A stretch of DNA of 64,000 nt from Trichoplax adhaerens (GCF_000150275.1 NW_002060948.1:2844180-2908179), one strand, 5' to 3'; shown: positions 1,066 to 57,913, counted from the first letter of the stretch. Notes: generated by a model from the sequence alone, not told the origin. Numbers and translations: made by a program.

Positions 1066-4000
1066 ATGGCTTCGATGAACATCAAGATTTCCTTCTTCAT
1101 AGCGTTATTCTGCTTAGGTAACTAAATATTGCTGCCACTAATATTTTTATTCGTATGCCCGTAGAATTTTAATTGGAAATTTCGCCGATTTTAATGAAAC
1201 CATATTCATATTATTGTGGCGATAACAACAAATACTTTTAACTATACGTACTGTCTTATCGAGAGAGAACGCCTATTATCAAATTAAAAGTATAATTTTC
1301 ACTTTCTATAACTATACAAGTAAGATAAATGTTATTCCAGTGAGTAGATAAAGTATACTTTCGTTCATGATATTTATGATTAGAATTTGCTAACGACACC
1401 TGTGATTTATTTTACTGAAATAAATTAAGACGACTACTCCAATGTTGCGTAAATTCATTTGGAAGATATCTATAAAATTGACACTATTAACCATGCACTA
1501 AATAACAAGTTGCCCTAATATAATAAAATGACTTTCTGCTTGCAGCTTTCGAGAATTCCCATGGTGCTACACAGAATTCGATTATAGATAGTGGTAATTC
1601 GATTGTAACCTTAGTTATCAAGAATCGGCCGTATACATCACTATATAGATATAAAGACAAAGAGCCTTACTTAAGCTTAATCGCCGAATTCAAGTCAGGG
1701 GTAAGCCTACATTACGATAATGTCAAATATTGAATTTGCTTTGAAATTTGATCCATGTTTGCTTCTAGAATATAAATTTTTCAAAGACTACTTTTCTATT
1801 ATCTTAAAATAGCTTATTTAAGTAAAGCGGGTACGCGTAGGCTATCGGAGAAAGAGTAAAAAAGAAGTTCCTTTCAAATATTTATACTCCGATCATTAGA
1901 AATAAAAACTGAAACCAATCTTATAAATATTTAGATGTGATTTATACTATTTAAAGTTTACTCTAAGCGAATTTCTAGAAGCATAAGTAAATTAATTGTT
2001 GATCTTAGATTATTTTTATACTTTAATACAATCCTACTTCAGAAAAACATACATGGAAGATGAACGGTTGAGGATATATTCATGAGTACAGCTTGTATAT
2101 ATATAGAGTATATTTATCGCATATACTTATAATGAGTTTGGGATATATATTTACGGCGATCAGGTATAACGCTAAACTGAATATTTACTCGAAATTTAGA
2201 CCTGTTAAATGATAGGATAAAAAATATGGTCAAAGTCCATTCTGTAGTTCTACCCTCAATCTAATTTATTGTAGTTTCACATCAGTATGAACGTAGTATC
2301 TCCTCATCAGTTAAGTCTACCATTTTCACATATACGTATTGGAAATGTCATTAATAAACGTTTAAATTACAGTCCATTGAAAATTTGCGGTATCGCTTCG
2401 GTTCCTTATTCACATCCAATATGTTATGATTTTTACTAAGATAAAGTTTATTATCCAATCTGATTGGATAATTAAGTAGGTGATTTTATCCTAGTATTTT
2501 TAATGGATAAAATAATGTGATGAAAGTGACTTTATTAGTTAAGATTTTGATTATGGATTTGCTATTAAGCTGATATTCAATTTGCAATTTATCTTTTTTG
2601 ATGGGTTATTATCCATCTCTCTTGCTAAAAATAACAACTTTAGATAATAACCATGATGCTTGGAGCTGTTGGAAACTATACTCTTCCGCGCATAGGATCC
2701 GCAAAGTATGTTGCTCTGGAGAATCACGTTATTATGTGACAAGTTAAATAGCCTTTATTTCTTTCAGTAGGATTTTATAATCACTAATATGCAATATAAT
2801 TAATTTACTATTTATTATGAATAATTTATCATATTCTTATTAGCCTTAGTGTAATGTTGTATTTTCTATTTTGCATTCAGCCAAGTGTAACGTTGAAGTG
2901 ATGGGATATCATCATGTATTAATTATGAGAAATTGATCATACCGGTACTTTATGCCATGATTTGGCTGTATAGACGCGTGATAACGGCATAAGAAATCTC
3001 AAAACGCTTTACACATAGTTTTTCACACCTGATCAATTTATTTCATGAGAATATTTAAAGAAAATGAAAAATATATTAATATTTAAAATTTTATCGAGGA
3101 AAATAGATAAATTATTTTTAATTCTTAATATTGATCATCGATTGAAAGGAGTTGATATGATTGTCATGAAACGCAATATCAGAATTTTTGTTCTCAAGTA
3201 GTTTACTTGTTCAGTTAATGCCGTCTATATTGTCATCTACATTAATTTTAAATTGATTAGTCGATAGAAAGAAAATTAACTATCATAGTTATGATGAGAA
3301 ATCGTTTACCAATATTGTTCGAGGGTGAACTTAAATAAAAATAGTCAATCCGTCTAGGATTGTCTGATTTTTTAAATGTTAATTCAAATATTTTTGTTTG
3401 ACGTCAATTGAATTAATTATTTAATCCTTTCAAATGATTTAACCTTATTGGTATTGTGTTTTTATATTTTCAAAATATCCGGTCATGCATTGATAAATGG
3501 TAATAGATCAGAATCTTATTGTCAGCTATCAACTCCTGTTCCTACCGCTGTCGGCAATACTGTACCGACTGCTTTGCCAACTGATTGCAGGTAATCTATG
3601 AAGAGATAATATTAGCTGTACATATTTATGTCGTAATCCTGGTGAAAATATTGACGTCAAGATGATAGAATGAGAAAATGGTTTAGTTTATTTTCAGCTG
3701 TTATTTCAGATTTTAATATTTTAATCTTTCAATCAATTAATCAATCAATCAATAGCTTCTTAATGATAAGCTCTAATTAAGTGCTCAATAAAAGAACGTA
3801 TTTTAATGGAAAATGAGTATCAGTCAGGATTGGAGCATTATAACTTTATACAGATAGCTTAGATTAATTTGCAAATTACTTGAATTTGAATATAATGCCA
3901 TTGTCATCGAGGATTGTATTCATCGTAGAGTCACTATTTCTTGCCATGATTGGAATTTGTATCTTGTTAGATAAGATTAAAAGTGCAGCTTGATTACGTA

Positions 4001-7000
4001 ATTTGTCATTAGAAATTTGAAAGCATAATTCTAGTATACTATACGGTTATTTTCAACATATAATTTAGTTTAAATGAATAAGATAACTGGGAGCCTTGAA
4101 GTAGCTTGGGGTGGCGGAATCATTTGCTCGATCTTGATGACTACCTTAATGAGAAAAGCGGTATTCGAATTTAATACTATCAACAATTCAAATAGTGGTA
4201 ATATAGCATTGTCACAAACCAACTTCGTGACAAAGATAATGTAAAACAAATCTCTAAATTACTATAGTCTCCGGGATTCAGTATCTCTTAACTACCTCAC
4301 AAGAATTTAGACGCCTTTGCTTCTACGTTAAAACAACTATATAACTCTTTTATTCAACTATCTGCCGAGCTTAAATACCCTTCGGCAGCAGCTATCATGT
4401 ATGAGCCATAACAGTTCACGAAATTTAGCTCATATTGGATGGCTAAATTAAAATAGACATCATTCATAATTTTGGACTTTTGCTGAACGATTCTAGATAA
4501 TTAGACTACAGTATGCCTACACACAGAATTAATTATAGTATCATCTATAATTGAATATCTTTAGGATATTCATTACAAGCGTTACAAGACATAACGCTAT
4601 CATTAATTAATGTTACTTACCTTATGAGAACTCTTACTGCAATACAGCATAATTTACTGTAACAAAATAATAACTACTGTAGTTCTTACTGTAAGTCATT
4701 ATTAGTTATCTCCATATATAAATGTTAAACACTAAAATTAGTCATTTACTCTTCACGGTATTTTGTACCGTGACAAGTATTTAGAGCATATTTGATGAAA
4801 CGGAATAAAATAGACAAGTAATTATAGCTAATGTAGACGCTCTGAATTTTGTTATGTGGCTAGAAGGCTAAACGAACACATAGTTTTGACAATAGCTTTA
4901 GATAATTGATAGTGTATAATCTAACGTTCGATTCTAACCTTCAATGTAGTCTACTATTACCAGATCAGAAAGCAATATTCTTTTATTATGATCATCACTA
5001 ATCAATTTGCTAGCATCATTTCTGCCTAAAAGTAATATTGATTCTTGAATACTTAAGATTCGTAACTACTATTAATTATTGAATATGTATTGGCCAAGTT
5101 ATTGCCATCTTATCCGATCACTAATAGCGCATTTTTTTAAACATTTTCATCCAAATTTTATTGGTACTGCATCTATCAACCGAGCAGCAGTAAATATGTC
5201 AAAATTTCGGGTATTTTACATTTTGAGTACTATATCAATACCGGCTTTCGGCGAAATGGAATTAAAGAAATTTGGGATAAGGCCATGGCCTTGGGCTTTA
5301 TAGGCAATTTTGAATTAATTCCAGAAAAATGTGTATTGAAACTTGAATTGGTAAATTAGCAAATTTCCTTTCTAAATGCAACTTGATTTACTGCCGTATT
5401 AAACAAACTTATTATGTCTATTCGTATGCTATTGTCAAGCAAGATAACTTTAATTCTTTCTTACGGATCATTTTTTTGCCAATTATTTCTCTTAGTTTGT
5501 TAATTCAGAAAACTTAAATAGTAAAGTGCAATCAGACAATAAGAATGATAATGGAACCGATTATAAAGCAGCTTTTCGAAAAGCCGTACGTTCTATGTCT
5601 GAAATTGGTAATGGTTTATCCTTGATTGGCGCTTTTTTGACATTTTTCACATTAATATCTTTCAGGTATTAATATGTCTATTCTATTCAATATCTTTGTG
5701 TTGTTTTTATAGTTTTTAGCTAGGATCCATTTGAGTAAATAGGATATAGTTAAGGATTATGCAATAATGTTGACCCATATTAATTGAATTAATAAAGTAC
5801 TGGATATTAAGTTATATTAGTAGGATACTATGTTGAAGATATAGCGCCAACATTCCAATGATTCTCATAACGCAGTCTTCTATGAGCCTGCTTTATTATT
5901 GAATCTTTTTTACTGTTACTTTGACTGACTAGCATTTCTTATATTGAATTTCTTGTAGTAAATTACGGAAAAGGAAGAGCAATTTAATTATCTGTATCTT
6001 ATGCATCAGTGTAGCTGCCGTCAATATATTAAATTTCGCTGTGCAACGATCTGCTGATTATCCTATCCCTTGCCTAATTGTCGCTATTCTCAGCCATTTC
6101 TTCTTATTATCTAAAATTATCTGGATGACTATTTTAGCTTTCCACTTATACTTTGAATTGATTAAAGTTTATTCTACTGTCAATCTCTTAACTACTTCTA
6201 AATTGATCTTGATCACTACTGTGATAGGATTTGGTAAGTGAAAAAAAGCAATCTATCCATTTTCTCTGTCATGATAGAGAGCTGTATCGCAACTATGTTT
6301 AAGAACAAGTCCGATTTACGTTCTAATTTATCTCATCCTCTCTTTCATCGTTATTTCTAGGTATACCAATCCTAGTAGTCGGTATAGCTTATATTGCTGA
6401 TGGCGACAAAATCTATGGCAGGAATGCCAATGGATTGTAAGTTTTAAATTAATTTAAATTAGCTATAGTATGCAACCGTTTCAACAGCGGAAGCAAATTT
6501 CTGTATTATAGATTCCAGTTATCGATCGATCTTATACTTTATAAATCACTTTAACATCAAATCGATATCATTAGATTCTACTGCGTGCTGATGGATTTAA
6601 TACTTCAAATAAAGTTCTCGGTCGAGCTTATGCTTTATAAATTACTTCAATATTATAATCCATATTATTAGATTTTACTGTACGCCGATTGATATGACTC
6701 TTTACAACTATCGTTATTTTTATGATCTAGCTGTTGGATGAATGCCGTCCATGCTGATGCACTTTTCATCTATCCTATGCTCGCCTTAGTAGGCGTTAAC
6801 TTTGTTATTTTCATCTTGATCTTCTACCAAGTTCGTAAATTATCCAAAGATCGAGATGGCAATTTTACTCTATCGCAAATGAGGGCATTAATGGCTTTAG
6901 TCACAGCTCTAGGTCTTGCTTGGATATTTGTATTATTGACTTATATCGAAAAACCAGTCTTTCTAAAAAATATTGCTGAAGTCCTTTTTGTCGTTTGTAC

Positions 7001-7646
7001 TTCATTGCAAGGCTTCTTCCTCTATTACTTTTACTGTGTATCTAAAGATGAAGTCAGAGCTTGCTATATGAAATTATTCGGTTACCAACCACTCAGTCAA
7101 ACACAGAGCGGTACTTCTACTAAGCCAACGAATGGTAGTTCACGAAATTTAACACGTATAGGAAGGGATTTAAGGTCTTATCATTCAGAGAAATCTATTT
7201 CACCTAGTGTTTCAACGCAAAAAATTGCTGAAAATACGACTTATAAGACTAATTTAACATCCAATGATACCACCAAACGAGGTAGTGCATGTAGTAGTTT
7301 AACTGGTTCACAGTTAGAAAAAATTGAAGAAGAGAATATTGCTAATGCAGAAGAAGCGAAGGAGGTGAAATCGAGTGCAGAGAAAGCAATATCAAGCAAT
7401 GATGGTAATTCAGGTACGGTTAATATCGCTTTTGAAGCTGAATCAGCTAGCTCAAAATCCACTAATGAAGATGAAATCACTTTCGAGGGTAAAAAGAAAG
7501 AGAAAAGAGTTAGTCTTCAAATCAATGGTAAGATTGAATTCCCAGAAAAGTCAGTAGAATTGACTATTGAAGAAGTCAAGCCAGAAATTCAAATTGCAGA
7601 CGCTAGTAAAGAATATGATATAACTGCCAATGATGATAGAGTATAA
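1066..7646 (+). CDS. Adhesion/secretin-like (family B2-type) 7TM GPCR with N-terminal SEA-like domain and no GAIN/GPS; paralog A, ~649 aa, 9 exons
   Basis: Hand-spliced GT-AG exons 1066-1117, 1546-1700, 2644-2705, 3507-3590, 5191-5350, 5496-5665, 5959-6233, 6361-6436 and 6731-7646 total 1950 nt in one open frame. Signal peptide MASMNIKISFFIALFCLAF. SEA-like VTLVIKNRPYTSLYRYKDKEPYLSLIAEFKSG...IKEIWDKAMALGFIGNFEL. TM motifs EIGNGLSLIG, CLIVAILSHFFLLSKIIWM, CWM, ALGLAWIF, TSLQGFF. Long S/T- and E/K-rich C-tail. Confidence 0.88.
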
Positions 7647-10600
7647 GCAAACATTAACTTTTATTTCAGCTCTGCAATTATCTACTATACAAGTTTGTTA
7701 GAACTAATCAAGTCATGGTCAATCCATGGCATTGATTTAATGATCATCGTTGCAGTCATAGAACGCCTTTGTATTTGTAAATTGCTTCATAATTCTAATT
7801 TTATCGTGTTCATCTCGGTATGTTAAGACAAGAGTGGTTTTATTAATTTCATTCATCATTACTATATTATTACAATCGAATAATAAAATTGACTTATTGG
7901 ATCGATATACTTGCCATTATAACAGCAGTCTAAAGCCAGAGGTATAGAATTCATTTGATTTTCATTTCACTACTGTGACTGCATTCTTGTAGCTTAAAGA
8001 TAGAAACAGTCTGATTCGATTCAACTATCGATTGTTATATCGGCAACTAAATATCAATAACTTACCTGATCTATTGCTATTGCCGCAGTTTTTCAATTTA
8101 ATGGTAAAGGTAAAGTTATAATCGGCTTATTCTTGCTATCATTACTCTAACTTTTCAATAGATTGATAGTGGTAAATTTATTATGCGATTGCATTTCCCG
8201 TTATCATTGTATTCTACTGTATCGGTAGAGGCAATATCTACTGTGCTTGATCAAATTCCCATTTCAGTAATATTGAATTAAAATAGTATAACTTGAATGG
8301 TTCTTAATTATGTTATTATGCTACTGCAATTAAAGGCTAAATAACTAATATAACCAATTGAATGGCTACTTTTGGCAATCTCGATTCAATTACAATTGAT
8401 TTGATCTATCTATGTCATAAAAAACTATAATGTAATAGGTGTGCAAATTCTTCAATTGGATTATATTATTATCGTAAAACTTTTATCTGTTAGCTTTAAA
8501 CTGTGTGTTAAGGTAGTTTCTGAAACTTGGTTCCATGCCACAATCACGGTTTCAATTTTATTTTATTTTCCGGTTGTTAATAACTTTGCTTTCAATCATT
8601 TGGCGTTTGTAATTTTAAGAATATAAATGAGGTGTGATTTAGATTACTACTCATAGGCATAAAATTTTATGATTCGTTCTCTTTATCGAGACTATTCTCT
8701 GAAGATAATCAATATTCTAAGTATATAGATCATCTGCAATAGAAAATAGCAGCTCTTGTTTTTAAAACAGCTATCAACTTATTTGTTGTTATGATTGATA
8801 ATATCTTCTACAATTTTATTCATTCACCATATGATAATGTGGTCAACGTTATTCTTTCATTTTTTCTTATTCAATAAGGTTGAAGTTATTGTGATTTCAG
8901 CTATTATCGACTATTAACGATTATCAAATTCATTTTTTCTGTTATTTCTTTCAGTAAATTGAAAGTTAAAAATAAAATTAATTTAATGGCGTAAAAGACT
9001 TTAGGTAGTAAACCGATCCTTTACTAATATGTTAGTCCTTTCTTGGATTTGATTAGCGCACTCGCGTATGAGACATGGAAATAGAATTTAAGCTTAACGC
9101 ATGATGTAAAAAAGTGAGCTCATTAATTTATTGCTTACGTATAGGGATGTCAACGATCTATAATGTATCTACTGCAAGACTTGAGCAAATAGTTTATAGT
9201 TATCACGAGGTATTAATCTTGATAAATTATCTCAAGATTAAAATGAGGACCCAAAGTACTCTACTTAGATTTATTGTCACTAGACTATATACTTAAAACG
9301 TAAGTAGCCACAAATTCATACGTTATCATTATTTACTAATATGGTATCTCTTAATATATTCTGAGTATTTTCGTGATAGTAGATTAAGGTATGGAAAATA
9401 GCACGCCAGGTCATAGCCTGTGGGTAATCTATTTTATTTTACTGTCAGTACTGTTTATACTCTCATTTATGAATGGACAAGAAACTCATTTCATGAGAAA
9501 CTGTAAATGGAATAATAGCTGTCATAATTTCAAAATTTGTAATTGTTCTCGCGATGGTATTTAGTACTTGTGTAATGACTAACATTACTATTAATTGTCA
9601 GGGTTTTAGATGTAGTTTTATACAGTATAATTATCTTACATTAACAATTTGCGCTTGAGTAGGACTTCTTTAAAATAGACAGTATTTAAGGTCATGTAAC
9701 TTAAATAAAGAAGAGATAAGGAGATCGAAGAGATTTGTAATTATTTATTACACGTATATGATTAGTTTTGATCTTGTTAGTCGTTGGTAACATATCGGCT
9801 TTGGTTTAGTTTCGCGTTGGTAACTTCTCGTTCTCTCCTCACGAAATAAATTGATTATATTGACGGATCTACAAGTTTGGTCATTATTAATTACTCTATA
9901 TCAACAATAATAATCAAACACGAGAGAAAACCTTTTTGTAACTACGGCAATTTACGAGACCAAGGAAAACTTGATAGGAGGTTTTGCTATAAATCATCTT
10001 GAATAAGAATCAATCAATAATACATTAACGATAAAATCGAGGAGAATAGCATAGAAATCCAAGCTAAATTTATTGGCCTCAATAATAATTCTGAGAACTT
10101 AATTTGATTTTGATAATTGCAACAATTTGGGATACCTAGGAAAACTCTGCAACAGAATAGTCGGCATAAATTATCTATAAATAAAAGCCAGTTCATACAC
10201 TAATTTATTCAGTCGAGATAAGTAATATCATAGAAATCCCATCTTAATCCACTGATTACCCATTATTCTTGATATTGAAAGTAGATGTCATAATGTAGGA
10301 TTAAATTAGATAGAAACTTGTCTTCAATTGCTTATTTTCTTAACCTTAATTTCCTTTGTGGACTATCTTGACTTTGATGTTATTAAGAAGAGTTTATGGT
10401 AATTAAGCATCACCGATTTCTATTCATTTATTTTCCTTAAGATCCATGTAACAATGCAAATTCCTTTCAGGACATTTAATCATTTTCCACTGAATGGCTT
10501 TCGGATATCAATACTTGATAATAAATAAAATCAGTTTATTGTCTACCCTACTTCAATGGCTATACATAATTTTTATATGCTTAACGAATTTTCACTCCGT

Positions 10601-11255
10601 CGACACTACTGCACTATCAAAAAGTAAAGAATTCCGAGATTGATATCTATTCATCGAAATGCTAAAAGTGTTGTTTAAGATTACTCTTTGATGTTTTTAT
10701 TGCTTAGAAGGAATAAAGCAACAAATTATGATTTCTATTTCTTTCTTGTATGACCATTGCTCAGTTCTATCTGTAATTACTCATCGCGGCAATGAGAGAT
10801 TGAATTGATTTTTACTGCAGGAAATAAGCCCTTGAAAGCTTCAATTACATAATGAACTGATCAATAATTGAATTATTCTTACCTTGAAATCAGACGGTAA
10901 ATAAAAACTATTTAGGGAATAAATGGTAAGATATGACATTCTTTCTTCTAATCTAATTAGAGCTATCTTGATAACATTCTTAATATTGTTAAATACCTCA
11001 ATATTTATTTATTAAGTCATTTGAAAGGCCGTAGATATCTGATAGCTATTATGCGCATGAAGATTGTATTATCAATCATCATCATCATTTTGTTCCTTTT
11101 GCTTATTAAAATAAAATCCTTTCAATTAATACCAACATTGATAGATAAATATCTTAAAAAATTCTGATATTTTTATCATTTTCAACAAATTCAATTCAAT
11201 TGTAAAACTTGTTTATACTTTTATACAAATACGAAAAATCGCTCTATCTAGCAAG

Positions 11256-14200
11256 ATGTGTTTAAAACTTTATCTTCTGTTAGCAATTGCTATCAGTCAT
11301 CTCGGTAAGTTTTTTACTAGCCAAGATTAATTCTACTCTATATATATATTTTAGAAGTTAGAAGTTATAAATTCCAGTCTCGCGCCATACTTGGCCTACT
11401 TTTACTACCATATGTCATTGTGGTAAAGGATTTCCATAACTTTTAATTCTTGTTAAACAATTTTTAACATATCAGGTGTACAGTGATATAACTTATGCTG
11501 TACACGTATATCAATATACTGATAGATCATTAGCTCTCCTTTAATTAAATTGATTTATATTTGTCCGTAGATTTATGTATTGGCAAGTACTGTAATGATG
11601 ATGATGTGAAAGGGTGCGGTTATGTCTTGATGCAGTTGTATATAATTAATCGACCATACCTTCCTAGCTACCGAGATGAATATCATAAATCTTCGGTCTT
11701 ATTTCAATCTGAATTGCAAAATAGCGTAAGTGCTGTGGTTTTAAGTGATTAGTAAGAATTAGCAACAATAATTATAATTATTAATGATAGGGATGTTATT
11801 TTTACTATATTAAAAATTAGATTCTTGAAGAGTTCTCTAGTGTTGGCTGGAATTTTACCGATGTCGATATCATTGAAATTGGGTATGAATTTTTCGTATG
11901 TAATACTTTTCTTTAACATCATCTCTTTAATTTATGATGATTACTATTTTATGTAAATAATTCTTGTACTCGATTTATGAATAGAAATTTATGAGATTAG
12001 GGTATCTAGGCTCCTCATATCTTAGAGCGTTTTGTTGGTCGATTGATAATGATCAGTAATTGAAATAAATCTAAGTTGTACCATAAGTTGAATTTAAAAG
12101 TTCGCTACGGTAGATAATATAAAATAGCAATATGTTAACATTTGAAGCGCCTAACATATCTAATGATTACTTTCAGAGCCCATGAAAAAATGCTAGCATT
12201 TATTCTTTTACGGTTACGTCTAAAGTAATGACCGACAGTAAATCTGTTCAGTTAGAACTGAAACTTTGGGTCATATTAATCTCCACTTGCTTCTAGTCAG
12301 TTTTCTGTATGCCTTTACGTGAACTCTTGAGTGTATTTTTCGATTTTTTATTAGTTTCGATAGTTGGTGAAATATCTTGGCCATATGAACAAGATTGCTT
12401 ATGCTTAAACACCAATGTATTAGAGTTTGTTAAACATGATGTTTATTTTCGCTTCATTATCATTCAGTATTATACATCAATGCATTAATTTCTTTTATCA
12501 TGGTAAAAAATTAATTATACTAGCGGGTCTCGTATTCACCCAAATCGTTGTTCTTAACTTCGCATTAGATTTCGTTGATTGCTGACTGTTAGTCTTACGC
12601 GTATTAATAAGAGCAGCTTTTTAAATCTCGAGCTAGTATAGATCGATCAAAATCATTCTTAAATTTACAAACATTATCAGAAACAGCCGTATCAGATATA
12701 TATCTGAGCTTTATTTGGCCTTAATATTTCTGTTTTATATCACTTAATTCGATTATGATTTTTTATAGTTATAATCATCATTAAGGCTGTTATTCTAGCT
12801 ATCGTAGATAATTTGTATCAAGTTTATTAAATTGCTATTACAAATGTGAAAGGGTTTGTTTTAATATCGCTCAATATCAATGTAAGAAAAGTACAATATT
12901 TTGGTGTCAAATATAAACTAAAATCTTATAGAAAGGATTCTATGGCTCTATTAGGAGATATCTCTGATAAATCTTGTTGTCAAGAATATAAAGTATTAGG
13001 TTTAAATAGGTTATTTTTTTCTAGCAAAATAAGAAATTACGATATGTAGTTTATCTTTCTTGAAATGAAGTGAAAGTTGCTTATTCTTACTAGCATATAG
13101 TACCGTGCATACTCGTATATCCGGTAATGAGTATTAAAAGCGTCCCAAATAGTTTATTAACAATAATATTCATAAAATACATATTTGATTTTTTAACATT
13201 AATAATGTTAAGAGTACAATTATTATTCTGTTTCTTGCGTATGAAGTACTACTTTATCATAAATACTACAATAAGAGAAAATAATAATTGAAAGAAGGCA
13301 TTAGAGGATATCTGATATTAATTCGATCGGCAATCTATTCACTGCATTCTCTGCCATGTAGACAATAATAGAAATGATATCGGATATGGACTATAAATAT
13401 TTTGATATTGTTTATATTCCACAGAATGTGCTAACGCGTTAGAGATTAATAATAAATAGTACTAATATTAACTCTGTTTTGGATTAAAATAGTCCCGCGA
13501 TATATTGTGACTCAGCGACAGCCCCGCCAGTCCGGAAAATGGCCTCTTCTACTGCATCTTGCAGGTAAGACTTAATTTAGAGTTTAAAAATTGACATATC
13601 TCTACGTGATTGCAATCTATTCATATCTTGCAAATAACAGTAGACTTTAAATAATTTTTAAATTTTTTGACAGCGTTCTTGTGATGTAAATGCATTATTA
13701 GTAAGATAATTGTCCCATACTTGTCAAATGTCATTATCTACCGCACCAATTTAACTGCAGTTCGGTCTTATAAGCTGTCAAGGAAATTTCTTTTTCATCT
13801 GGGTCTAAATGGGTTAAAATAATTATTGTTTTTCCTGAAAAATCATAAGAAAGTAACTTCAAAATAGCAAACTACCGTAAATGAAATTTATATATGCTTT
13901 AATTCAATCATTTCATTGATGCTATTAGGAAATATTCGGAAAATGAGAGTAAAAATTTATCAAAAATTTTTATTTAATTACAAAGGCGTATTATAGAAGA
14001 CAGTATGTATTACTGTTTCTTGACTAATAGAAAAAGAGAAGTAGGCGATTAGTTTCCAATACGATGATGTAAATTCCGGCAGTATAGAAATTGATAGTGT
14101 GTGAATCCAAAATGCAACTTCTTTAATGTCATTAATAAATAAAGTACTAGAATAAGCAAGTGATTCAAATCTGTCTTCTCCATAACAAGAATTAGCATAA

Positions 14201-17200
14201 ACTAAATACATGTTTCAAAAACTGGAGGAGATAATGTTATAAGAAATTTAAACCTATTACCATTGCTATCAATGGAAAATGACTTGTAAATAATAAATAG
14301 GCTACTAAATAGATTACAAAGATTAGAGAATTCTTCAACAGAACTATTTTGGCAAGGAAATGGACACTGACGAGCATTGAGCGTAAAACGTTTTACTTTT
14401 TCATAGGAATTTCATCCGTACAAAAGTAGAGTTGTATTTCCAGCTGTTAGTAAGTGAATGTAATGAAACAATTAACGATATTTGGAAGCAAGTCATTAGC
14501 AAAGGTTATATTGGTCAACTGCAACTGGATATTGTGGATACTACTGGATTGGTATGCTAGATTGGTTCTATACATGTTCTTGTCTGTAATGTAAATTGTT
14601 AGTGATTTTGTCATGCTTGTCTGTTAATTTACAAAAGGGTTGCTTTAAGAATAGAATATGTATGATTCTAAACGCAGTACCAGAGGTTTAGATAAGCCTT
14701 CATGGATATCACTAATTGAGAGTTTTAAATGATGAAGCAGCAACTTTAAATTATTTTGGTAAATATGGTAAAATTGTTGTTGTGATCATAAAGTAAAATA
14801 TAGCATTTACACTTTAGTGGTGACGTAGTAAGTTACTGCAGTTAGTTTTTCGGCTTAGAATTACTACTTTTATGTAGTATAATTGCCACAACTACTCTTG
14901 CGACACAAGAAAACAACACAGTACTTATAATAAACTTTACGTTAATCCGCAGAACTACTTCCCTAGCCTACGGTATAGTAACTGGAATCCTTACGAAGTA
15001 CTAACTCGCTCAACACACTATACGATATAAAACTATCACACAACTTAGCCTTAAGCTGAAAATCCTTTTTATTGAACACAGTCCTTCTTCTATACTCTTT
15101 CAGTAGCTATAAACATATTTACTTTGATACCAACATATTTCAATAACAAACATGTTATTACGATTGAATTATCAAATACGGACATTCGAGGTAATAAACA
15201 ATTTCATACGTAAATCTACTTCGACTGTAAGCCCTGTCAAGCTCCTATGTTCTCGATACTTACTTGTAAGATATTACTATATCATCGTAATATCTTAATA
15301 ACTTAGGGTATTACTAAGAGTAACAATTCATAAAGTAGTAGTTCATACTTCTAAAAAGTTCAAAACAAAATGTTATCATAAACTACATTTCTATATCTAA
15401 GTTATTTTGATGACTGTGACAATAGTTTACAAACTTTAAGACTTCCTCAATTCATTTTAAAATAGAAAGCGAATACTATAGCTACTTTTTCTGTAATACT
15501 ACGAGTATTGCTGATAGCAAGCAATCCTAATAATTTGCTGAATTCTATAGCTTATACAAGTACAGAACGAATAATGCTAAGGCAAAATTACAGTAGTAGG
15601 TCTAAATCTACTCATATCTTCTATTCAAGCGGTATTTATACAGTATAATGATAACATCAGATCGATTGAATCTGTGCAGCTTTTACAATTATTATTATTA
15701 CGTTCATTTATTAATTATTGGAAAACAATTAAAAGGCGATTAATAAATCTTACGTATGGCTGATTTATACACCTTATAAAATACTCTTAACGTAGTTGAC
15801 GAAGAATTTGCTTAATAAATGACTCTTTTATCCTTTTTTAGAGAATTTTATTAATTTGATATTTATACTGAAACGTTAATAATGCAAAATAGAGCTAAAT
15901 TATTACCATAGTAAACTTTATAACGGACTAAATTTGGGAAAAATGAATAGTATGCTAGAGTACTGATATTTAATCTATTTATCATGCATGATTCACTGGC
16001 TATTTCCATTTAGATTACGTGGATAAATTATCCAACATCATTTCCGACAACACTGTCGACAGAGATGAACATAATTGCCACTTGGAGCACTAACATTACT
16101 GCAGAATCGGTTCTCTATCCTTTGTTACTTAGATCAGCAGAACAATTTGGAAATGGCTTTTCTCTAGCTGGTTCATTACTAATAATGTTTATCATTGTGA
16201 TCTGCAGGTAAATTCCTGGTAATAAAGCATACTATACGATAAACCTTTGCGGTTTCACAAAATCTTTTCTTTGTAGAAAAATTATATATTCAATCTTGCC
16301 CTTTGACACTATTAAAGTCGTAATTCACTTAGAATGTTATACAATATGTATGCAGAAAATGGACATATTAATATTTAACCTAGATTTTTACTAACATAGC
16401 TGGGTAACTATCCAATAGTTATTATTAAGTATTATCCTAGTAAGATATAACAAAACTGACCGAGATTTTAGCATGATTTTCTTTTTAGATTGTATGGTTG
16501 CTATATATTTATTATTTCTATTTCTATTTCTTGGGTTTGATCTACGCTGGAATATTAGAAAATTACGAAAAAGAAAAAGCAACTTAATTGTATGCTTATT
16601 AAGTTTTAGCCAATTGATTACCAATGCCTTAATATTACTCGATGGAAGGGCGAAACTTAGCAGCACAATTTGTCGCAGTATGGCTATCCTTATCCATTTC
16701 TTTCTGATGTCGAAAATATTATGGGTTGCTATTTTGGCTTTGCATTTTTATCTCGAATTAATTTATACTTCTATCAATGTCTTCATAACGGCTAAATTGG
16801 TACTAGTAGGAATAGGTTAGCGACTCATTACCCTAACGAAGTAATTTCGATACATATCCTAATCTAATGTTCGCTATTCGGATTAATTTTTATCAGCTAT
16901 ACCAGGTGTCATTGTCGCTATTTGTATGACTGTCAATAATATTAACGTTTACCATCTTCAATCTGATGGGCGGTAAGTAATTTCCATCTCTAAGAATGAT
17001 AGTTAGATGCTAGTGGTATAAGTATGCTCATTAATTTATGATAGTTATGAGAAAAGTTATAACTATACTTGGATGTAAAATAATATAAATTTATAATAAT
17101 TTCTTTAAAAATATCTAATTTAAATCATGTCATTATAATCATAGTTGTTGGATGAAGGAAAGTTTTTCAAAAGACTTTTTTCTGTACCCAATGTTTGGAG

Positions 17201-17463
17201 TTATTGCTGCCACTTTCATAGCATTTATTCTGATCATAATGAAAATTCGCTGTTTCAATGAGCGACGTTTTATTCCTATTTCTACCGCCAGATTGTTCGT
17301 ACTGGTGGGAGCGGTAGTTATTCTAGGACTATCGTGGCTATTTTCAAATTTGACTTTTATGACAATATCTGCCTCGAGGGATATTATTCAAGTTATATTT
17401 GTAGCCTTTACTTCAATTCAAGGCCTAATAATGTGCTATTTTTACTCTATTACTTATTTCTAA
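11256..17463 (+). CDS. Adhesion/secretin-like 7TM GPCR with SEA-like domain and no GAIN/GPS; paralog B, ~442 aa, 9 exons, no C-terminal tail
   Basis: Exons 11256-11304, 11571-11725, 11821-11882, 13493-13564, 14407-14551, 16014-16207, 16559-16815, 16897-16972 and 17145-17463 total 1329 nt in frame. Intron phases match paralog A, and three exons are identical in size (155, 62, 76 nt). Shared motifs NRPY, G(Y/F)IG, GNG.SL.G, KLRKRKSNLI, HFFL.SKI.W, CWM, TS.QG. Confidence 0.85.
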
Positions 17464-18523: not shown

Positions 18524-21500
18524 TTAACGATAAAGAAGAAAGGAAACTAGCAGAAGTAATGGTAGCAGGGTCCACACTTGCGTTTGGTTATGGTTCATAC
18601 CAACTGCTGCACCTGTTGTAGTTTTATTATGATCGGCAACAACTTTATCACCGTACTGGCTTAAAAATTCCAAGCAGACACCATTGGACCAACCGAAGCC
18701 CACCTAGATATTCAAAAATTTTAAATTAATCCTTGGAAAATTAATGTTAACTGCAATTTCTTTATCGAATTGACGGTATGAATTATTAGTTATTATCATA
18801 CTGTAATCAATGCCTAGATTGACATTAATCGAAGAATACCTGTACGTTGTATTCTCCACCTCTTCCTGGGTTACCAGGAATAGCAGCATCGAACTATTTG
18901 TATACAAATTTAATTGAAAAATATTCCAGTTACTTTATATCAAAGCCATGAAAGAACGTTATGACATTTACGGCTACAACATATTTACAGTTTTTTAGTT
19001 CTACTGACCTTTTCGTACATATAACCAGTCGATTTCCATGATCGCCAGTTTGTCAATAGCCATTTTTGAGCTAATTTGAAAGCTTCATCTTTTAATTCTG
19101 GTGCTTCACTTCCGGACATAGCTGCAACAGCCATTTGCTGCAATGGTGGCCATGAATTTGGATAATCCCATTGCTGGCCACTGCGAAGTAAAGTGGTTGG
19201 TATACCTCCAGCAAAATCGAAGATTTTCATCGCCTAGAAATTGATTTAGGCAAGATTGATAGCAATTATTGAGTCTAACAGTACCGTATACTATACTCGT
19301 ATAGCACATCGCTTATAAATTGATTTAAGCAAGATTGACACCAATTATATTATTGAGTGTAACTGTATCATATACTATGCGCGTATAATAAATCGTCTAC
19401 CAATTGATTTAAGCAAGGTTGATAAGACATTAAGATTGTAATGTGATTAATTAAATCTGCCACATTCGAACACTATTATTGCTTAGGGTAGTTGAGATTC
19501 ATCAACATCTTTTTACAATCGCCTCTGCAATCTACATCGAACTAAACTCAAACCAATGATCATAATATGCTTAATATTAATGAATTAAACAAATTGTCGG
19601 AATAGGCAACACACTTTATGATTATTCATTCTGGTAAAATGATAATATTAGAAAAAGCTAATCAGTGATGGCATTTAATATCTGTAATTTGTTCCTTGAA
19701 ACTAAATTAGCCATATTTATTACAATACACAGATGAATTCCTTTATCAAATGATCTTGTATAACAATTTTTACCTATAGATGACTCTCATGTGAATTTAC
19801 CTTAAGGGCTTGGTGGATTTTTCTTTCCTTGGTGACGTTACCCTTGAAAGAATCGTAACATTTTGCCCACATCGGTAGAAAAACTGAACCCATAAAATCA
19901 GTTCGCGGCTTTTTCGATAGTAAATCATAGTCTAGCCATCTTCCTTCGTATTCATCCCATAGTACACCTTCAATAGCATCACGGCGTGCTTCGCTAGCTC
20001 GCTTATACCTATCAGCCTTAGCATTATCTCCTAATAATATAGAAGACGATCTATTCAGCTTAAAATATCGAATAATGTCCTTCCTATGCAATGGTCTTTA
20101 TTATAATAATTTAAAGGTATATCTTATAGCATTTATATATTTAATGGAATGAATTAAATGATTACCTAGCATTCTACTAAATTTCTCTAAAGTTAATTCA
20201 TTAAAGCAAAGGATAGCATTTAGGTCAACTGGAATAATCTGCTTCGTTACTATGCTAGATAAATCTCCAATAGGTTTATTAAACCATCGACTGCTAAAAT
20301 CCCAACCACTTTCGGCAGCGGAAGCAATATCAGAATACAATTCTGCGGCTATTTGTAATCAATAAAATTGATGATGTATTAATATATTTATATATGGCAA
20401 CTATTTCAAGTAGTGATATAGAAGCATACCAGCATTGGGATTTAAATTCTTTGCAGTTTCGACGTCTTCCCGATACGATTCTGGCCTGAGTAATAAATGA
20501 AGAATTGTAAATAAACTTGTACGTATATATATAATTATGGTGGGTTTCTCCCTTCTCAGGTTATGCCGTATAAATTGATTACTACTTGAGTCTTTGCCAG
20601 GCAAAGTAATATTTTTATGATTGTAAATTAATTATAATTCTATAGTACATGATACTAGCTAACTAGATAGGGCTAGCGTTAAATTGCTACACAATGACGT
20701 TGCTTGGATATCGTTTGCTGTTTAAGTTATGACTCTAACGTAGAGATAGATATGCTACTTAGTTAGTGCTAGCGCTAAACTGCCACGCAATGAAACTGAT
20801 GTTGCCATCTCCTTGGACATCTTTTATTATTTGTAGGGTCATGACTGTAGTATAAAGTACTGGCTACCTAGTTTAGTGCCAGCGTTAAACTGCTACGTAA
20901 GGAAACTGATGTTGCAATCTCCTTGGATATCCTTTATTATTTACAGGGTTATAGTAGTAACGTAGAAATACCAGCTGCCTAGTAAGTTTCAGTATTAAAC
21001 TGCTACGCAACGAAACCGGGATTACCATCTCTTCGGATATCGTTTACTGTTTATAGGGCTATGATTGTAATGTAAAAATACTAGCTACCTAGTTATTCCA
21101 GCGTTAAAATGTAACGCAATGAAACTGATATTGCTACCTCCTTAGATATCGTTTATACTCGTAGGGCTATGATTGTAATGGAGAGATACTGGCTACCTAG
21201 TTATTCCCGGCGTTAAGCTGCTACGCAATGAAACTGACGTTGCATCTCTTTGAATATCGTTTACGATTTATAAGGGTTACGATCGCAATGGATAATGTCT
21301 GCCTGCAATTAATGATGTCCAGGATGGACATTAAAATGTCTTATGCCTTACCTTGGCATACCCATATCAACAGCATAACGATTAAGTGTATATGTCTTTC
21401 CGTTGCGTACGATATCAACAGTTCGGTTGTTCATCCAGAAATTGTATTCTTTTTCCATTTTTGAAAGCAAGCTTTGGACATAGCTAAGATCATTAGTTGC

Positions 21501-28125: not shown

Positions 28126-40512
<12,387 letters not shown>

Positions 40513-41415
40513 GACCAAGCCAATGAGCCACTGCAAGGATGATTTTTTGGAATGGAGAGCCAAAAACGATGATGGAGAAATACAAAATGTCAGCGGCTTG
40601 CTAATAGACAGCTTGAATGGAAAATGCCTTTCCTCCGTCTAGTCAGCGACGTCCTACCACAGTCCGTCTGACACTACAGCCATGATACGGTATCGGAAGA
40701 AATAGGGACCGGACCGGTACCAGCACACCGGACTAGTAACTTTGACTCATCGAGACTGACCCGTGGGCAGAGTGACCCGCGACATATATGTCACAGTCTA
40801 TATGTCATATATATTTGCGTACTACTCATCATGTACAGTAGACTCAGTAGTACACTGAATCATGGAGTCCATCCCTACGTCAGTCTATCTGAAGTTGAAT
40901 GCATCAACTCTGACTGACGACGTCTGATCATCATCATATTAATTCATTCATTATAATAGAGCTTTGTGTGTGAAAACTCTTGAGCAATTCGCAGTTACTG
41001 CGCACAATCGATATCTTTCTGTGGCTGCTTAACCATGCTCATTGGTAATGCGCAGAAGTATGAGACTGCGTATTTTATTTACTCTCTAATACGCAGAATC
41101 GTAAGATTGATGAGAAGTGGAAGAAAATCAAGTAGCAAGTTTCGCAACATGCCGATTTACAACTACTGCGCACAATCGACATCTTTCTGCGGCTGCTTAG
41201 TCGTGCTGAATGGCAATGGAGGCATCTTGGCCTCTGCGCCAGATCAATTGATCCTGTACACGATTTCGATGAGGACAATATACTAATGGAGTATGCAATT
41301 TCACTGTTGCGGTTCGCTATTTCAAACGGTATGCCATTTCTGTCATGCCTATCGATGGAGAGATGAACACCAATACGCGGCCATTTTTTGACTAGTAATT
41401 ACAATTAATGATTGG

Positions 41416-56665: not shown

Positions 56666-57913
56666 TTAATTCTTCCATGAGATTCCAGCTTGGCCTAAAA
56701 ATAAATCTTGATCACTCAAAGCTCTAAATAGAATAAATGACTTTAATCTTTCCATCCATAAGAAACCAAAGGTATCTTTATCGAAAACTACTAAGCGACC
56801 TGGTATAAATTTGGCATCTTTATAGCCATGATAAGCTATCTGGCCTTCCCCTTCAAATTCACCATAATAATGAGAGGGTATACCATGTGAACGATGAGTA
56901 TAATCTTCAGGTAGTGAGAAAGGGAAAATTTTTCCACCGTCTTTTAACACATAAGGTCGGTCCATTGATTCGCTCGTGACGGGCTTATCAAGAAATGCCT
57001 TAATACTAACTTTTCCAGCAGGTACATTAGGATCACCAGATAGTTTCTGACCAATTAATTCATTCTTGTCGATATAGACATGCAATGTCTCAACACCGTG
57101 TGCTCCGTAAGAGCCAGAATAGATGCCGCAACGCAATGGAAAATTTTCACTAATAGATCGCTGTGATAGGCTGACGAGGCGTTTATAAGAGGTTAATTGC
57201 CAAGTAAATAAGTTAGCATATAATTTTTTTTCTAATAAAGTACGCGTTACAATGTCTTCGTCATCATAATAAGGATTCTCTTCTAAAAACCACTGCTTAT
57301 ATGTATCACTATTTGAGAATGAATTGATAGCAATTATAGATAATGCTACATCATCCCTATCTAAACACTTCAATTGAAATTCCAAGACAAGTTGTTCTTC
57401 ATCTCTTTTAGAGATGATAATGTTACCCATACATTCATGGCCCAAAAATGAAAATGATAAAATTTTAGTAGATATCCTATTATCATCATAGCAAGGGATA
57501 ATTTTAAATAGACAACGATGTAGAATATTAAATTCACCCGAATTTTCTAACAAACGTTCATTTCGTCGTAGTACATATTCATTACAAATAATAGCACCAT
57601 TATCAATTTTAATACAGACCAAACCACCATAAGGATCAACAACACGATACCATAAGCCTAATAAGGGGCCATAACGATATAATATTTTTTGATAAAATTC
57701 TTTAAAAGTGTGGATATCTTGCCATGACTCAATCTCACGGATGTTGTATTGATTTTTACAATGTTGTTGCCAAATCCAATCACTTTGAGTAGCATGATAA
57801 AAATTTCTACAAACTAAAGATACGGCAAGATAATCTTTTATAGGTATAAACTGAAAAATATGAAGAATTAGTTCTGTAGGGAGATGTTCAATGGATGTGG
57901 ATGCAGTCGCCAT
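56666..57913 (-). CDS. FBXO31: F-box only protein 31 (SCF substrate receptor), single-exon CDS, 415 aa
   Basis: N-terminal F-box (LPTELILHIFQFIP..DYLAVSLVCRNF), followed by the FBXO31-type motifs YGPLLGLW...PYGGL, GSYGAHGVE, KLSGDPNVPAG and GEGQIA..G...FIPG.L..FD.D.FGFLW. Confidence 0.9.
   Translation of the reverse strand: MATASTSIEHLPTELILHIFQFIPIKDYLAVSLVCRNFYHATQSDWIWQQHCKNQYNIREIESWQDIHTFKEFYQKILYRYGPLLGLWYRVVDPYGGLVCIKIDNGAIICNEYVLRRNERLLENSGEFNILHRCLFKIIPCYDDNRISTKILSFSFLGHECMGNIIISKRDEEQLVLEFQLKCLDRDDVALSIIAINSFSNSDTYKQWFLEENPYYDDEDIVTRTLLEKKLYANLFTWQLTSYKRLVSLSQRSISENFPLRCGIYSGSYGAHGVETLHVYIDKNELIGQKLSGDPNVPAGKVSIKAFLDKPVTSESMDRPYVLKDGGKIFPFSLPEDYTHRSHGIPSHYYGEFEGEGQIAYHGYKDAKFIPGRLVVFDKDTFGFLWMERLKSFILFRALSDQDLFLGQAGISWKN

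What the first reader, a model, noticed from the sequence alone, without database searches (positions are those of the whole stretch)
1066..17463. Tandem pair of GAIN-less 'SEA-7TM' adhesion-like GPCRs
Seen: both genes splice to complete ORFs of signal peptide, one SEA-like domain, a ~30-40 aa stalk and an adhesion-type 7TM. No GPS motif (C...W...GC...C.C.H(L)T) lies between SEA and TM1. The models close in frame and share exon phases, so no GAIN exons need to be invoked. Known: adhesion GPCRs normally carry a GAIN domain next to TM1; SEA-bearing ADGRF1/ADGRF5 keep GAIN, and ADGRA1 is the known GAIN-less exception. Inference: this may be a receptor type in which a SEA fold, which is force-sensitive in mucins, occupies the juxtamembrane sensing position normally held by GAIN. 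The N-terminal exons are largely invisible in the ORF track, so automated annotation could miss this architecture.
Basis: partly seen in the sequence, partly recalled or inferred. Interest (0 to 1): 0.8.

Follow-up and report, generated by a model that had tools for sequence, protein, structure and literature searches.

The report
GAIN-less SEA-fold adhesion receptors, Trichoplax
Two neighbouring genes of the placozoan Trichoplax adhaerens encode adhesion-type seven-helix receptors in which the usual self-cleaving GAIN domain is replaced by one small SEA-fold domain, a rare natural exception that is in the databases but apparently undescribed.

Summary
The window is Trichoplax adhaerens. Positions 1066-7646 and 11256-17463 (+) carry two intact, same-strand multi-exon genes with identical exon phases. 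Gene 1 has 9 exons and 650 aa. It equals the Trichoplax sp. H2 protein RDD42451.1, and the JGI annotation splits it into TRIADDRAFT_57424 and 57425. Gene 2 has the 9 shared exons plus one extra symmetric exon and equals H2 RDD42448.1.

Both encode a signal peptide, an ectodomain of about 155-180 aa, a stalk of about 30 aa and an adhesion-type 7TM.

No GPS, GAIN or Stachel was found by Pfam, a six-frame scan or a motif search. The same GPS model scored in 64 other places in the genome and in 10 of 10 control receptors.

At least seven Trichoplax paralogs exist; the six in the 7TM tree form one clade (SH-aLRT 100). A separate GPS-less family exists in hexacorals.

Verdict: a new variant of a known kind, of moderate interest.

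The parts
1066..1117 (+). Gene 1 exon 1: start codon and signal peptide (MASMNIKISFFIALFCL-), ends in phase 1
   Evidence: Read. Residues 1-17 of H2 protein P0209 map here at 100% identity.
1546..1700 (+). Gene 1 exon 2 (155 nt): SEA-like strand 1 and helix 1 (GNSIVTLVIKNRPY...EPYLSLIAEFKSG)
   Evidence: It is 70% identical to paralog P0003 residues 25-64, which are strand E25-40 and helix H51-67 in the AlphaFold model.
2644..2705 (+). Gene 1 exon 3 (62 nt): end of helix 1 and strand 2 (IITMMLGAVGNYTLPRIGSA)
3507..3590 (+). Gene 1 exon 4 (84 nt, symmetric, phase 2-2): Cys-bounded Pro/Thr/Ser-rich loop. It sits where canonical SEA domains have the G|SVVV hairpin.
   Evidence: The homologous stretch in the P0003 model has pLDDT 46-50 and lies between strands 2 and 3.
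5188..5350 (+). Gene 1 exon 5: SEA-like strand 3, helix 2 and strand 4 (SKYVKISGILHFEYY...IKEIWDKAMALGFIGNFELIPEKCVLKLEL). The acceptor at 5188 gives the 650-aa H2 protein. AGs at 5183-84 and 5189-90 are in-frame alternatives.
   Evidence: dN/dS is 0.21 against ortholog contig L004.
5496..5665 (+). Gene 1 exon 6: stalk of about 30 aa, and TM1
5959..6233 (+). Gene 1 exon 7: TM2-TM3
   Evidence: Pfam 7tm_2 E 8.2e-07 on the open frame. Borders read.
6361..6436 (+). Gene 1 exon 8 (76 nt): TM4
6731..7646 (+). Gene 1 exon 9: ECL2 CWM motif, TM5-TM7 and a cytoplasmic tail of about 210 aa; stop codon at 7644-7646
   Evidence: Pfam 7tm_2 E 1.7e-09. 100% identical to P0001 and P0209.
11256..11304 (+). 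Gene 2 exon 1: start codon and signal peptide (MCLKLYLLLAIAISHL-), phase 1
   Evidence: It matches the N-terminus of H2 protein P0012.
11571..11725 (+). Gene 2 exon 2 (155 nt): SEA-like strand 1 and helix 1
11821..11882 (+). Gene 2 exon 3a (62 nt): ILEEFSSVGWNFTDVDIIEI, the homolog of gene 1 exon 3
   Evidence: mapping of P0012. The length and phase equal those of gene 1 E3.
12932..13009 (+). Gene 2 exon 3b (78 nt, symmetric): an extra exon present in the H2 model and absent from gene 1. Skipping it keeps the frame.
13493..13564 (+). Gene 2 exon 4 (72 nt, symmetric): Cys-bounded loop (PAIYC...TASC)
14407..14551 (+). Gene 2 exon 5: SEA-like strand 3, helix 2 and strand 4
16014..16207 (+). Gene 2 exon 6: stalk and TM1
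16559..16815 (+). Gene 2 exon 7: TM2-TM3. The H2 model instead adds 16278-16348 and starts this exon at 16489, which adds 47 aa.
   Evidence: The insert has pLDDT 43-50.
16897..16972 (+). Gene 2 exon 8 (76 nt): TM4
   Evidence: It matches P0012.
17145..17463 (+). Gene 2 exon 9: TM5-TM7. The stop at 17461-17463 falls right after TM7, so there is no cytoplasmic tail.
   Evidence: 100% identical to P0012 residues 411-515.

Best explanation
SHOWN.
- The two genes are functional members of a placozoan clade of class B2 (adhesion-type) seven-transmembrane receptors. Trichoplax adhaerens has at least seven paralogs.
- In this clade the ancestral GAIN/GPS module is absent.
- The whole extracellular part is a signal peptide, one compact alpha/beta domain of SEA-type fold (strand-helix-strand-strand-helix-strand), and a stalk of about 30 residues that runs into TM1.
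- The SEA-like domain carries a disulfide-bounded Pro/Thr/Ser-rich loop, encoded by its own symmetric exon, at the strand 2-strand 3 hairpin. Canonical SEA domains cleave themselves at G|SVVV in that hairpin.
- There is no GPS, no Stachel (TxFAVLM) and no conserved G-S dipeptide.
- The 7TM keeps the adhesion-class landmarks: the TM3-ECL2 cysteines with the CWM motif, the TM5 Pro/Asn, the TM6 G..W and the TM7 QG.

INFERRED.
- The receptors are not autoproteolytic and cannot be switched on by an exposed tethered agonist.
- They most likely signal through G proteins when something binds or displaces the small SEA-fold cap or its variable glycosylated loop, which sits directly over the helix bundle.
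For: Gene models.
- Exon-by-exon reading with conserved phases.
- Independent H2 annotations match the models.
- The same tandem pair is called in the H2 genome.

Purifying selection on gene 1. dN/dS is 0.07-0.21 against a placozoan-like contig in which only the exons align.

Adhesion-type 7TM.
- Pfam 7tm_2: E 3.4e-28 for P0001 and 6.2e-28 for P0209.
- The best PDB sequence hits of paralog P0003 are ADGRG2, ADGRG6 and ADGRL3 at about 1e-16. PAC1R scores about 5e-3.

No GAIN or GPS.
- Pfam finds none at E<=10 on the full-length P0209 and P0003, and none at E<=1 on four further paralogs.
- The six-frame GPS scan finds 64 places in the genome, none in the window and none at three paralog loci.
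- The C.C.H[LIVMF][ST] motif is absent from all 11 family-set sequences checked (nine placozoan and two Nematostella) and present in 101 of 141 other relatives.
- 10 of 10 size-matched control receptors have a Pfam GPS.

SEA fold.
- AlphaFold model of P0003: ectodomain core pLDDT 76-90, element order strand-helix-strand-strand-helix-strand.
- ESM Atlas leads to SEA clusters for P0003 and P0012.

One clade. SH-aLRT is 100 for the six placozoan members against 137 other relatives.
Against: - No sequence method ties the ectodomain to SEA. Pfam SEA gives no hit. hhalign against Trichoplax SEA domains gives 1.4% and 6.5%.
- The fold evidence rests on a predicted model of a paralog (about 55-70% identical per exon to gene 1), not of the window's own proteins.
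- The model of the gene 2 ortholog has a low-confidence ectodomain (pLDDT 35-69), and its fold search was filled by 7TM hits.
- No transcript or protein data were available.
- For gene 2, the extra exon 3b and the H2 model's 47-aa insert between TM1 and TM2 are unresolved. The gene also sits on a long branch and has no cytoplasmic tail.
- The signalling mechanism is inference only.
Confidence: 0.8

Rival explanations
1. The ectodomain is a generic ferredoxin-like alpha/beta sandwich that arose independently, or is too diverged to call. The SEA resemblance is then convergence of a common fold, not homology.
For: - Pfam SEA gives no hit at E<=10.
- The six-frame SEA scan finds 11 places in the genome and none in the window.
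- hhalign gives 1.4-6.5% probability.
- The cleavage motif is absent.
Against: - The weak hhalign match is in the expected register, the end of strand 1 and helix 1.
- ESM Atlas feature hits and structure hits both point to SEA families.
Confidence: 0.2
2. One reading: the SEA fold acts as a force-sensitive module that took over the mechanosensing role of GAIN next to the membrane.
For: - The position is right. The SEA-fold domain is the only module, and it sits about 30 residues from TM1.
- From general knowledge, cleaved mucin SEA domains are mechanically labile.
Against: - The G|SVVV hairpin that makes mucin SEA domains separable is replaced by a disulfide-closed loop.
- No G-S is conserved among the paralogs (alignments).
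- No Stachel-like hydrophobic strand follows the domain.
- The ectodomain has no adhesion domains to pull on.
Confidence: 0.12
3. The gene models are incomplete, and GAIN/GPS exons are hidden in the introns or upstream.
For: - Introns of 1-2 kb exist, for example 3591-5187 and 14552-16013.
- The JGI models were wrong at the N-terminus.
Against: - The six-frame GPS scan finds nothing in the window at E<=1, while it detects 64 GPS exons elsewhere in the genome.
- The models start with a signal peptide, close in frame and keep their phases across at least five loci.
- The H2 annotation gives the same ectodomain.
- A GAIN domain would have to lie between exon 5 and TM1, which are joined by a conserved phase-0 junction.
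Confidence: 0.03
4. Gene 2 is a decaying or non-functional copy.
For: - It has a long terminal branch (1.14) in the 7TM tree.
- It lacks a cytoplasmic tail or helix 8 after TM7.
- The TM5 Asn is replaced.
- Its ectodomain is modelled with low confidence.
- Its Pfam 7tm_2 scores are weaker.
Against: - All nine or ten exons are open with canonical splice sites and conserved phases.
- The TM6 G..W, the TM7 QG and the CWM motif are kept.
- The gene is annotated in H2.
Confidence: 0.12

Closest known systems
Adhesion GPCRs of the ADGRG/ADGRF type that carry a SEA domain (ADGRG6/GPR126, ADGRG4, ADGRF1, ADGRF5)
   Same: - The 7TM is adhesion-class. The best sequence and structure matches are ADGRG2, G6, G4, D1 and L3.
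- A SEA-type fold is present in the extracellular region.
   Different: - Those receptors keep HormR/GAIN with a GPS and Stachel between SEA and TM1.
- According to a review citation (reference to Abe et al. 2002), the SEA of Ig-Hepta (ADGRF5) is cleaved.
- Here the SEA-fold domain is the only module, it sits next to TM1, and it lacks the cleavage motif.
ADGRA1 (GPR123), the accepted GAIN-less adhesion GPCR
   Same: - It is an adhesion-type 7TM without GAIN.
- The 2026 IUPHAR review names eutherian A1 orthologs as the exception to GAIN being found in nearly all adhesion GPCRs (PMC13197933).
   Different: - From my own knowledge, ADGRA1 has essentially no folded ectodomain and lost it late, within mammals.
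- The placozoan clade carries a conserved folded SEA-type domain.
- It is an old, expanded family.
Mucin-type SEA domains (MUC16, MUC1, TMPRSS family)
   Different: - There is no significant sequence similarity.
- There is no G|SVVV motif.
- A Cys-bounded loop of 25-45 residues is inserted at the cleavage hairpin.
- The domain is attached to a 7TM rather than to a single-pass anchor.
GPS-less short-N-terminus adhesion receptors noted in sponge (Krishnan et al. 2014, PMC4302439) and the hexacoral family found here (Nematostella XP_032219491.1 and its orthologs)
   Same: - They have a 7tm_2 core, a short ectodomain and no GPS.
- hhalign of the ectodomains alone gives 43% probability over strand 1 and helix 1.
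   Different: - The sponge cases were left open as possible model truncations.
- The hexacoral family does not group with the placozoan clade in the 7TM tree.
- Its fold was not tested here.

Membership tests
Adhesion GPCR (class B2) | 7TM domain of the 7tm_2 family, closest to adhesion rather than secretin receptors | tested here: met
   - Pfam 7tm_2: E 3.4e-28 (P0001) and 6.2e-28 (P0209).
- PDB sequence hits of paralog P0003: ADGRG2, G6 and L3 at about 1e-16, against PAC1R at about 5e-3.
Adhesion GPCR (class B2) | GAIN domain with a GPS motif immediately N-terminal to TM1 | tested here: not met
   - No PF01825, PF16489 or PF22259 hit on P0209 or P0003 at E<=10, or on P0012, P0011, P0154 and P0155 at E<=1.
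- The six-frame GPS scan finds 64 places in the genome and none in the window.
- The motif regex finds nothing in the family.
- Only about 30 residues separate the SEA-like domain from the 7tm_2 start.
- Positive control: 10 of 10 other short receptors have a GPS.
Adhesion GPCR (class B2) | Tethered agonist (Stachel, TxFAVLM-like strand) before TM1 | tested here: not met
   The stalks read FVNSENLNSKVQSDNKNDNGTDYKAAF... in gene 1 and ITWINYPTSFPTTLSTEMNIIATWSTNITAES... in gene 2. No H[LIVMF][ST].F motif is present.
SEA domain (Pfam PF01390) | Sequence match to the SEA profile | tested here: not met
   - No hit at E<=10 on P0003, P0209 or the single exons.
- No hit in the window in the six-frame scan.
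- hhalign against six Trichoplax SEA domains: 1.4% and 6.5%.
SEA domain (fold level) | Alpha/beta sandwich (strand-helix-strand-strand-helix-strand) superposable on solved SEA domains | tested here: met
   - Tested on the AlphaFold model of paralog P0003, not on the window's own proteins.
- The ESM Atlas structure leads for P0003 and P0012 are SEA-bearing clusters with TM 0.55-0.63.
SEA domain (autoproteolytic subclass) | G|S[VI]VV cleavage motif at the strand 2-strand 3 turn | tested here: not met
   The turn is occupied by the Cys-bounded loop of exon 4. Gene 1 alone has 'IGSAK', which is not conserved in the paralogs (GKV, GRA, AIR, EST).
Secretin-like receptors (class B1) | N-terminal hormone-receptor (HRM) ectodomain and a class B1 7TM | tested here: not met
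   There is no HRM hit. Class B1 structures score far below adhesion receptors by sequence.

The most novel reading that the evidence does not exclude
A SEA-fold domain directly capping an adhesion-type 7TM is an ancient, pre-bilaterian receptor design. It would be shared by placozoans and by the GPS-less hexacoral family, and it would work without GAIN, cleavage or a tethered agonist. This would be a second, independent way of coupling a juxtamembrane ectodomain to a class B2 helix bundle.
Probability: 0.2. Interest if true: 0.75.

Novelty: new variant of a known kind. Interest (0 to 1): 0.55.

Why it matters
- Current reviews treat GAIN as present in nearly all adhesion GPCRs, with eutherian ADGRA1 as the exception (PMC13197933). 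The GAIN-7TM module is dated to stem holozoans (PMC12716839).
- This is a conserved, expanded and selected clade that discarded GAIN and kept a different small folded domain at the same place. It is a natural experiment on how class B2 bundles are controlled without a Stachel.
- It offers a compact ectodomain-7TM unit of about 440-650 residues that is suitable for structural and signalling work.
- It shows that Pfam-based domain censuses of early-animal receptors miss SEA-type folds.
- It shows that the JGI Trichoplax models under-report N-terminal exons.

Tried and rejected
- My first exon 3 for gene 2 (11985-12055) closed the frame but was wrong. The H2 protein and paralog similarity place exon 3a at 11821-11882.
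- A 'CRCGHYS' string in paralog P0003 looked like a GPS core. It lies about 100 residues from TM1. It comes from an upstream acceptor that no other paralog uses. It has pLDDT of about 46. In gene 1 the homologous stretch is interrupted by an in-frame TAA at 5138-5140, so I treat it as intronic.
- I recalled Drosophila mayo/CG11318 as GAIN-less. The 2026 review says it has GAIN plus 7TM, so I dropped it.
- The first MAFFT alignment with all short exon fragments (A1) misplaced many of them. I used reduced sets instead.
- Foldseek against the PDB returned only 7TM matches for both models, so it did not test the ectodomain.
- Word-based protein searches with an exon and with P0003 found only four proteins each. 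The exhaustive search was needed to find the family.
- hhalign of the hexacoral ectodomain against SEA found nothing. Only 1 of 11 hexacoral members gives a weak Pfam SEA hit.
- Literature searches for the locus tags and for the architecture found no description.

Full report
**Identity of the window**

The assembly has 105,631,681 bp in 1414 contigs. The window is C1409:2844180-2908179. The last coding exon of the first gene is 100% identical to TRIADDRAFT_57425 of Trichoplax adhaerens. Nothing here is human, and no contig was treated as such.

**How the spliced models were handled**

All searches on the window's genes were done exon by exon, by reference. Full-length evidence comes from proteins returned by the tools, namely the Trichoplax sp. 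H2 annotations. The step of folding or searching a joined model of the window's own exons was left out.

**Gene 1**

- Reading the DNA and mapping paralog and ortholog proteins gives nine exons with canonical AG/GT borders.
- The exons are 1066-1117, 1546-1700, 2644-2705, 3507-3590, 5188-5350, 5496-5665, 5959-6233, 6361-6436 and 6731-7646. The total is 1950 nt, or 650 codons.
- The H2 strain protein RDD42451.1 (P0209, 650 aa) matches this model at 98-100% identity. tblastn reported seven of the nine exons; E4 and E8 were not reported.
- The JGI annotation splits the gene in two. TRIADDRAFT_57424 (125 aa) covers exons 1-4 plus a spurious end. TRIADDRAFT_57425 (500 aa) starts at an internal Met in exon 5.
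- A placozoan-like metagenome contig (L004) aligns to gene 1 only over exons 5-9, at 72-82% nucleotide identity.
- dN/dS against that contig is 0.21 (exon 5), 0.18 (exon 6), 0.10 (exon 7), 0.07 (the 7TM part of exon 9) and 0.13 (the tail). dS is near saturation.

**Gene 2**

- The exons are 11256-11304, 11571-11725, 11821-11882, 12932-13009, 13493-13564, 14407-14551, 16014-16207, 16559-16815, 16897-16972 and 17145-17463.
- The total is 1404 nt, or 468 codons. Skipping the symmetric 78-nt exon 3b gives 442 codons.
- The H2 ortholog RDD42448.1 (P0012, 515 aa) has the same ectodomain exons. It also has 47 extra residues between TM1 and TM2, from 16278-16348 and an earlier acceptor near 16489.
- That insert has pLDDT 43-50 in the AlphaFold model. 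No paralog has it. I take it for an annotation artefact but cannot prove that.
- The shared exons of the two genes have identical phases (1, 0, 2, 2, 0, 2, 1, 2). Exons 2 (155 nt), 3 (62 nt) and 8 (76 nt) have equal lengths in both genes.
- The same tandem pair, on the same strand with about 3.6 kb between the genes, is called in the H2 genome.

**The 7TM is adhesion-type**

- Pfam 7tm_2 matches the exons and the proteins.
- The best solved-structure sequence matches of paralog P0003 are ADGRG2, ADGRG6, ADGRL3, ADGRG4 and ADGRD1, at about 1e-16 to 1e-12. Secretin-type receptors score about 5e-3 or worse.
- The adhesion-class landmarks can be read in gene 1: the TM3 Cys and ECL2 CWM, TM5 P...N, TM6 LGLAW and TM7 SLQG. 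Gene 2 keeps most of them but ends directly after TM7.

**No GAIN, GPS or Stachel**

- Pfam finds only 7tm_2 in P0209 and P0003 at E<=10. At E<=1 it finds neither GPS nor GAIN in P0012, P0011, P0154 and P0155. In P0011 even 7tm_2 fell below that threshold.
- A six-frame scan of the whole genome with the GPS model finds 64 places. None is in the window or at the three fetched paralog loci.
- The motif C.C.H[LIVMF][ST] is absent from all 11 family-set sequences checked (nine placozoan and two Nematostella). It is present in 101 of 141 other relatives.
- As a positive control, ten other receptors with similarly short N-termini all have a Pfam GPS just before the 7TM.
- Only about 30 residues lie between the last ectodomain strand and the 7tm_2 start.

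**The ectodomain**

- Sequence methods do not call it SEA. Pfam gives no hit.
- hhalign against six bona fide Trichoplax SEA domains gives 1.4% for the whole alignment and 6.5% for the ectodomain alone. The short match is in the expected register, the end of strand 1 and helix 1.
- Structure supports SEA. The AlphaFold model of P0003, the closest paralog of gene 1, has core pLDDT 76-90. P0003 is 70%, 58%, 55% and about 44-50% identical to gene 1 over exons 2 to 5.
- The element order in that model is strand 25-40, helix 51-67, strands 74-80 and 84-90, a low-confidence loop at 91-131, strand 132-148, helix 155-168 and strands 174-186.
- The ESM Atlas gives SEA clusters as top feature hits (0.85) and structure hits (TM 0.55-0.63) for P0003. 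For P0012 it gives SEA-bearing clusters by structure (TM 0.55-0.58). These are leads only.
- The gene 2 ortholog model has the same order of elements but low confidence. Its fold search list was filled by 7TM hits.
- Exon 4 is symmetric. It encodes a loop that starts with YC, ends with C and is rich in Pro, Thr and Ser. It sits between strands 2 and 3, where canonical SEA domains have the G|SVVV self-cleavage hairpin.
- No G-S is conserved across the paralogs. Self-cleavage, and the mucin-style force lability that depends on it, are therefore not supported.

**The family**

- The same ectodomain exons occur at C1411:7.25 Mb (TRIADDRAFT_56009 / RDD44479.1), C1409:5.05 Mb and C1381:0.18 Mb (RDD39088.1).
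- The exhaustive protein search adds TRIADDRAFT_57516 / RDD44093.1 and TRIADDRAFT_57663 / RDD44229.1. That makes at least seven paralogs.
- In a 7TM tree of 144 relatives, the six placozoan members with full proteins form one group with SH-aLRT 100. The midpoint root falls on its stem.
- Gene 1 groups with 56009, not with gene 2, so the tandem arrangement is old.

**Outside Placozoa**

- Nematostella XP_032219491.1 (540 aa) and its orthologs in Oculina, Montipora, Acropora and Desmophyllum are 42-48% identical over 91-99% of the length.
- They have an ectodomain of about 215 residues, 7tm_2 and no GPS. All more distant hits carry a GPS.
- Ectodomain-only hhalign of the placozoan against the hexacoral family gives 43% probability (pairwise E 2.5e-4) over strand 1 and helix 1.
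- The hexacoral family does not join the placozoan clade in the tree, and its fold was not tested. This remains a lead.

**Literature**

- The 2026 IUPHAR review says GAIN is found in nearly all adhesion GPCRs except eutherian A1 (PMC13197933).
- A 2025 eLife study dates the GAIN-7TM module to stem holozoans (PMC12716839). Absence here is therefore a secondary loss.
- Krishnan et al. 2014 noted sponge adhesion receptors with short N-termini and no GPS, and left open whether the models were truncated (PMC4302439).
- I found no paper that names these locus tags or describes a SEA-fold-7TM receptor without GAIN.

**Verdict**

The architectural interpretation is supported at fold level. The mechanosensing inference is not supported. 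I class this as a new variant of a known kind. The sequences are already public and auto-named (GPR126, ADGRG4, ADGRL3). The architecture appears undescribed.

Noticed in passing
window 1066-3590 and 5285-7646: The JGI annotation splits one gene into TRIADDRAFT_57424 (125 aa, exons 1-4 plus a spurious C-terminal 'FLMISSN') and TRIADDRAFT_57425 (500 aa, starting at an internal Met in exon 5). The H2 strain model RDD42451.1 has the whole 650-aa protein.
   Followed up: yes
window 16278-16348 and 16489-16558: The H2 model of gene 2 inserts 47 residues, including a hydrophobic stretch, between TM1 and TM2. No paralog has this insert, and AlphaFold gives it pLDDT 43-50. It is probably an annotation artefact but would need cDNA to settle.
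   Followed up: partly
window 5117-5187; L003 (C1411) reverse-strand 5587-5649: Paralog 56009/RDD44479.1 is annotated with 21 extra residues (ICDVLNASYFSLFGCRCGHYS) from an upstream acceptor. The other paralogs use the downstream acceptor. In gene 1 the similar stretch carries an in-frame TAA at 5138-5140, so it is intronic there.
   Followed up: partly
P0025, P0159-P0168 (hexacoral proteins; not in the window): Nematostella, Oculina, Montipora, Acropora and Desmophyllum share a conserved family of 530-560-aa adhesion-type 7TM receptors. They have an ectodomain of about 215 aa and no GPS. The ectodomain shows weak similarity to the placozoan one (hhalign 43%).
   Followed up: partly
G000 C1409:5048500-5057500 (L001): A further family member with the same exon layout was found, for which no annotated protein turned up in any search.
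   Followed up: partly
window 19777-20091 (-), 39988-40563 (-), 56669-57913 (-), 62112-62429 (-): Unrelated neighbours in the window: a trehalase exon, a trefoil (P-type) domain exon of a likely alpha-glucosidase, a single-exon F-box plus cyclin-D1-binding-domain gene (415 aa), and an arrestin_N exon.
   Followed up: partly
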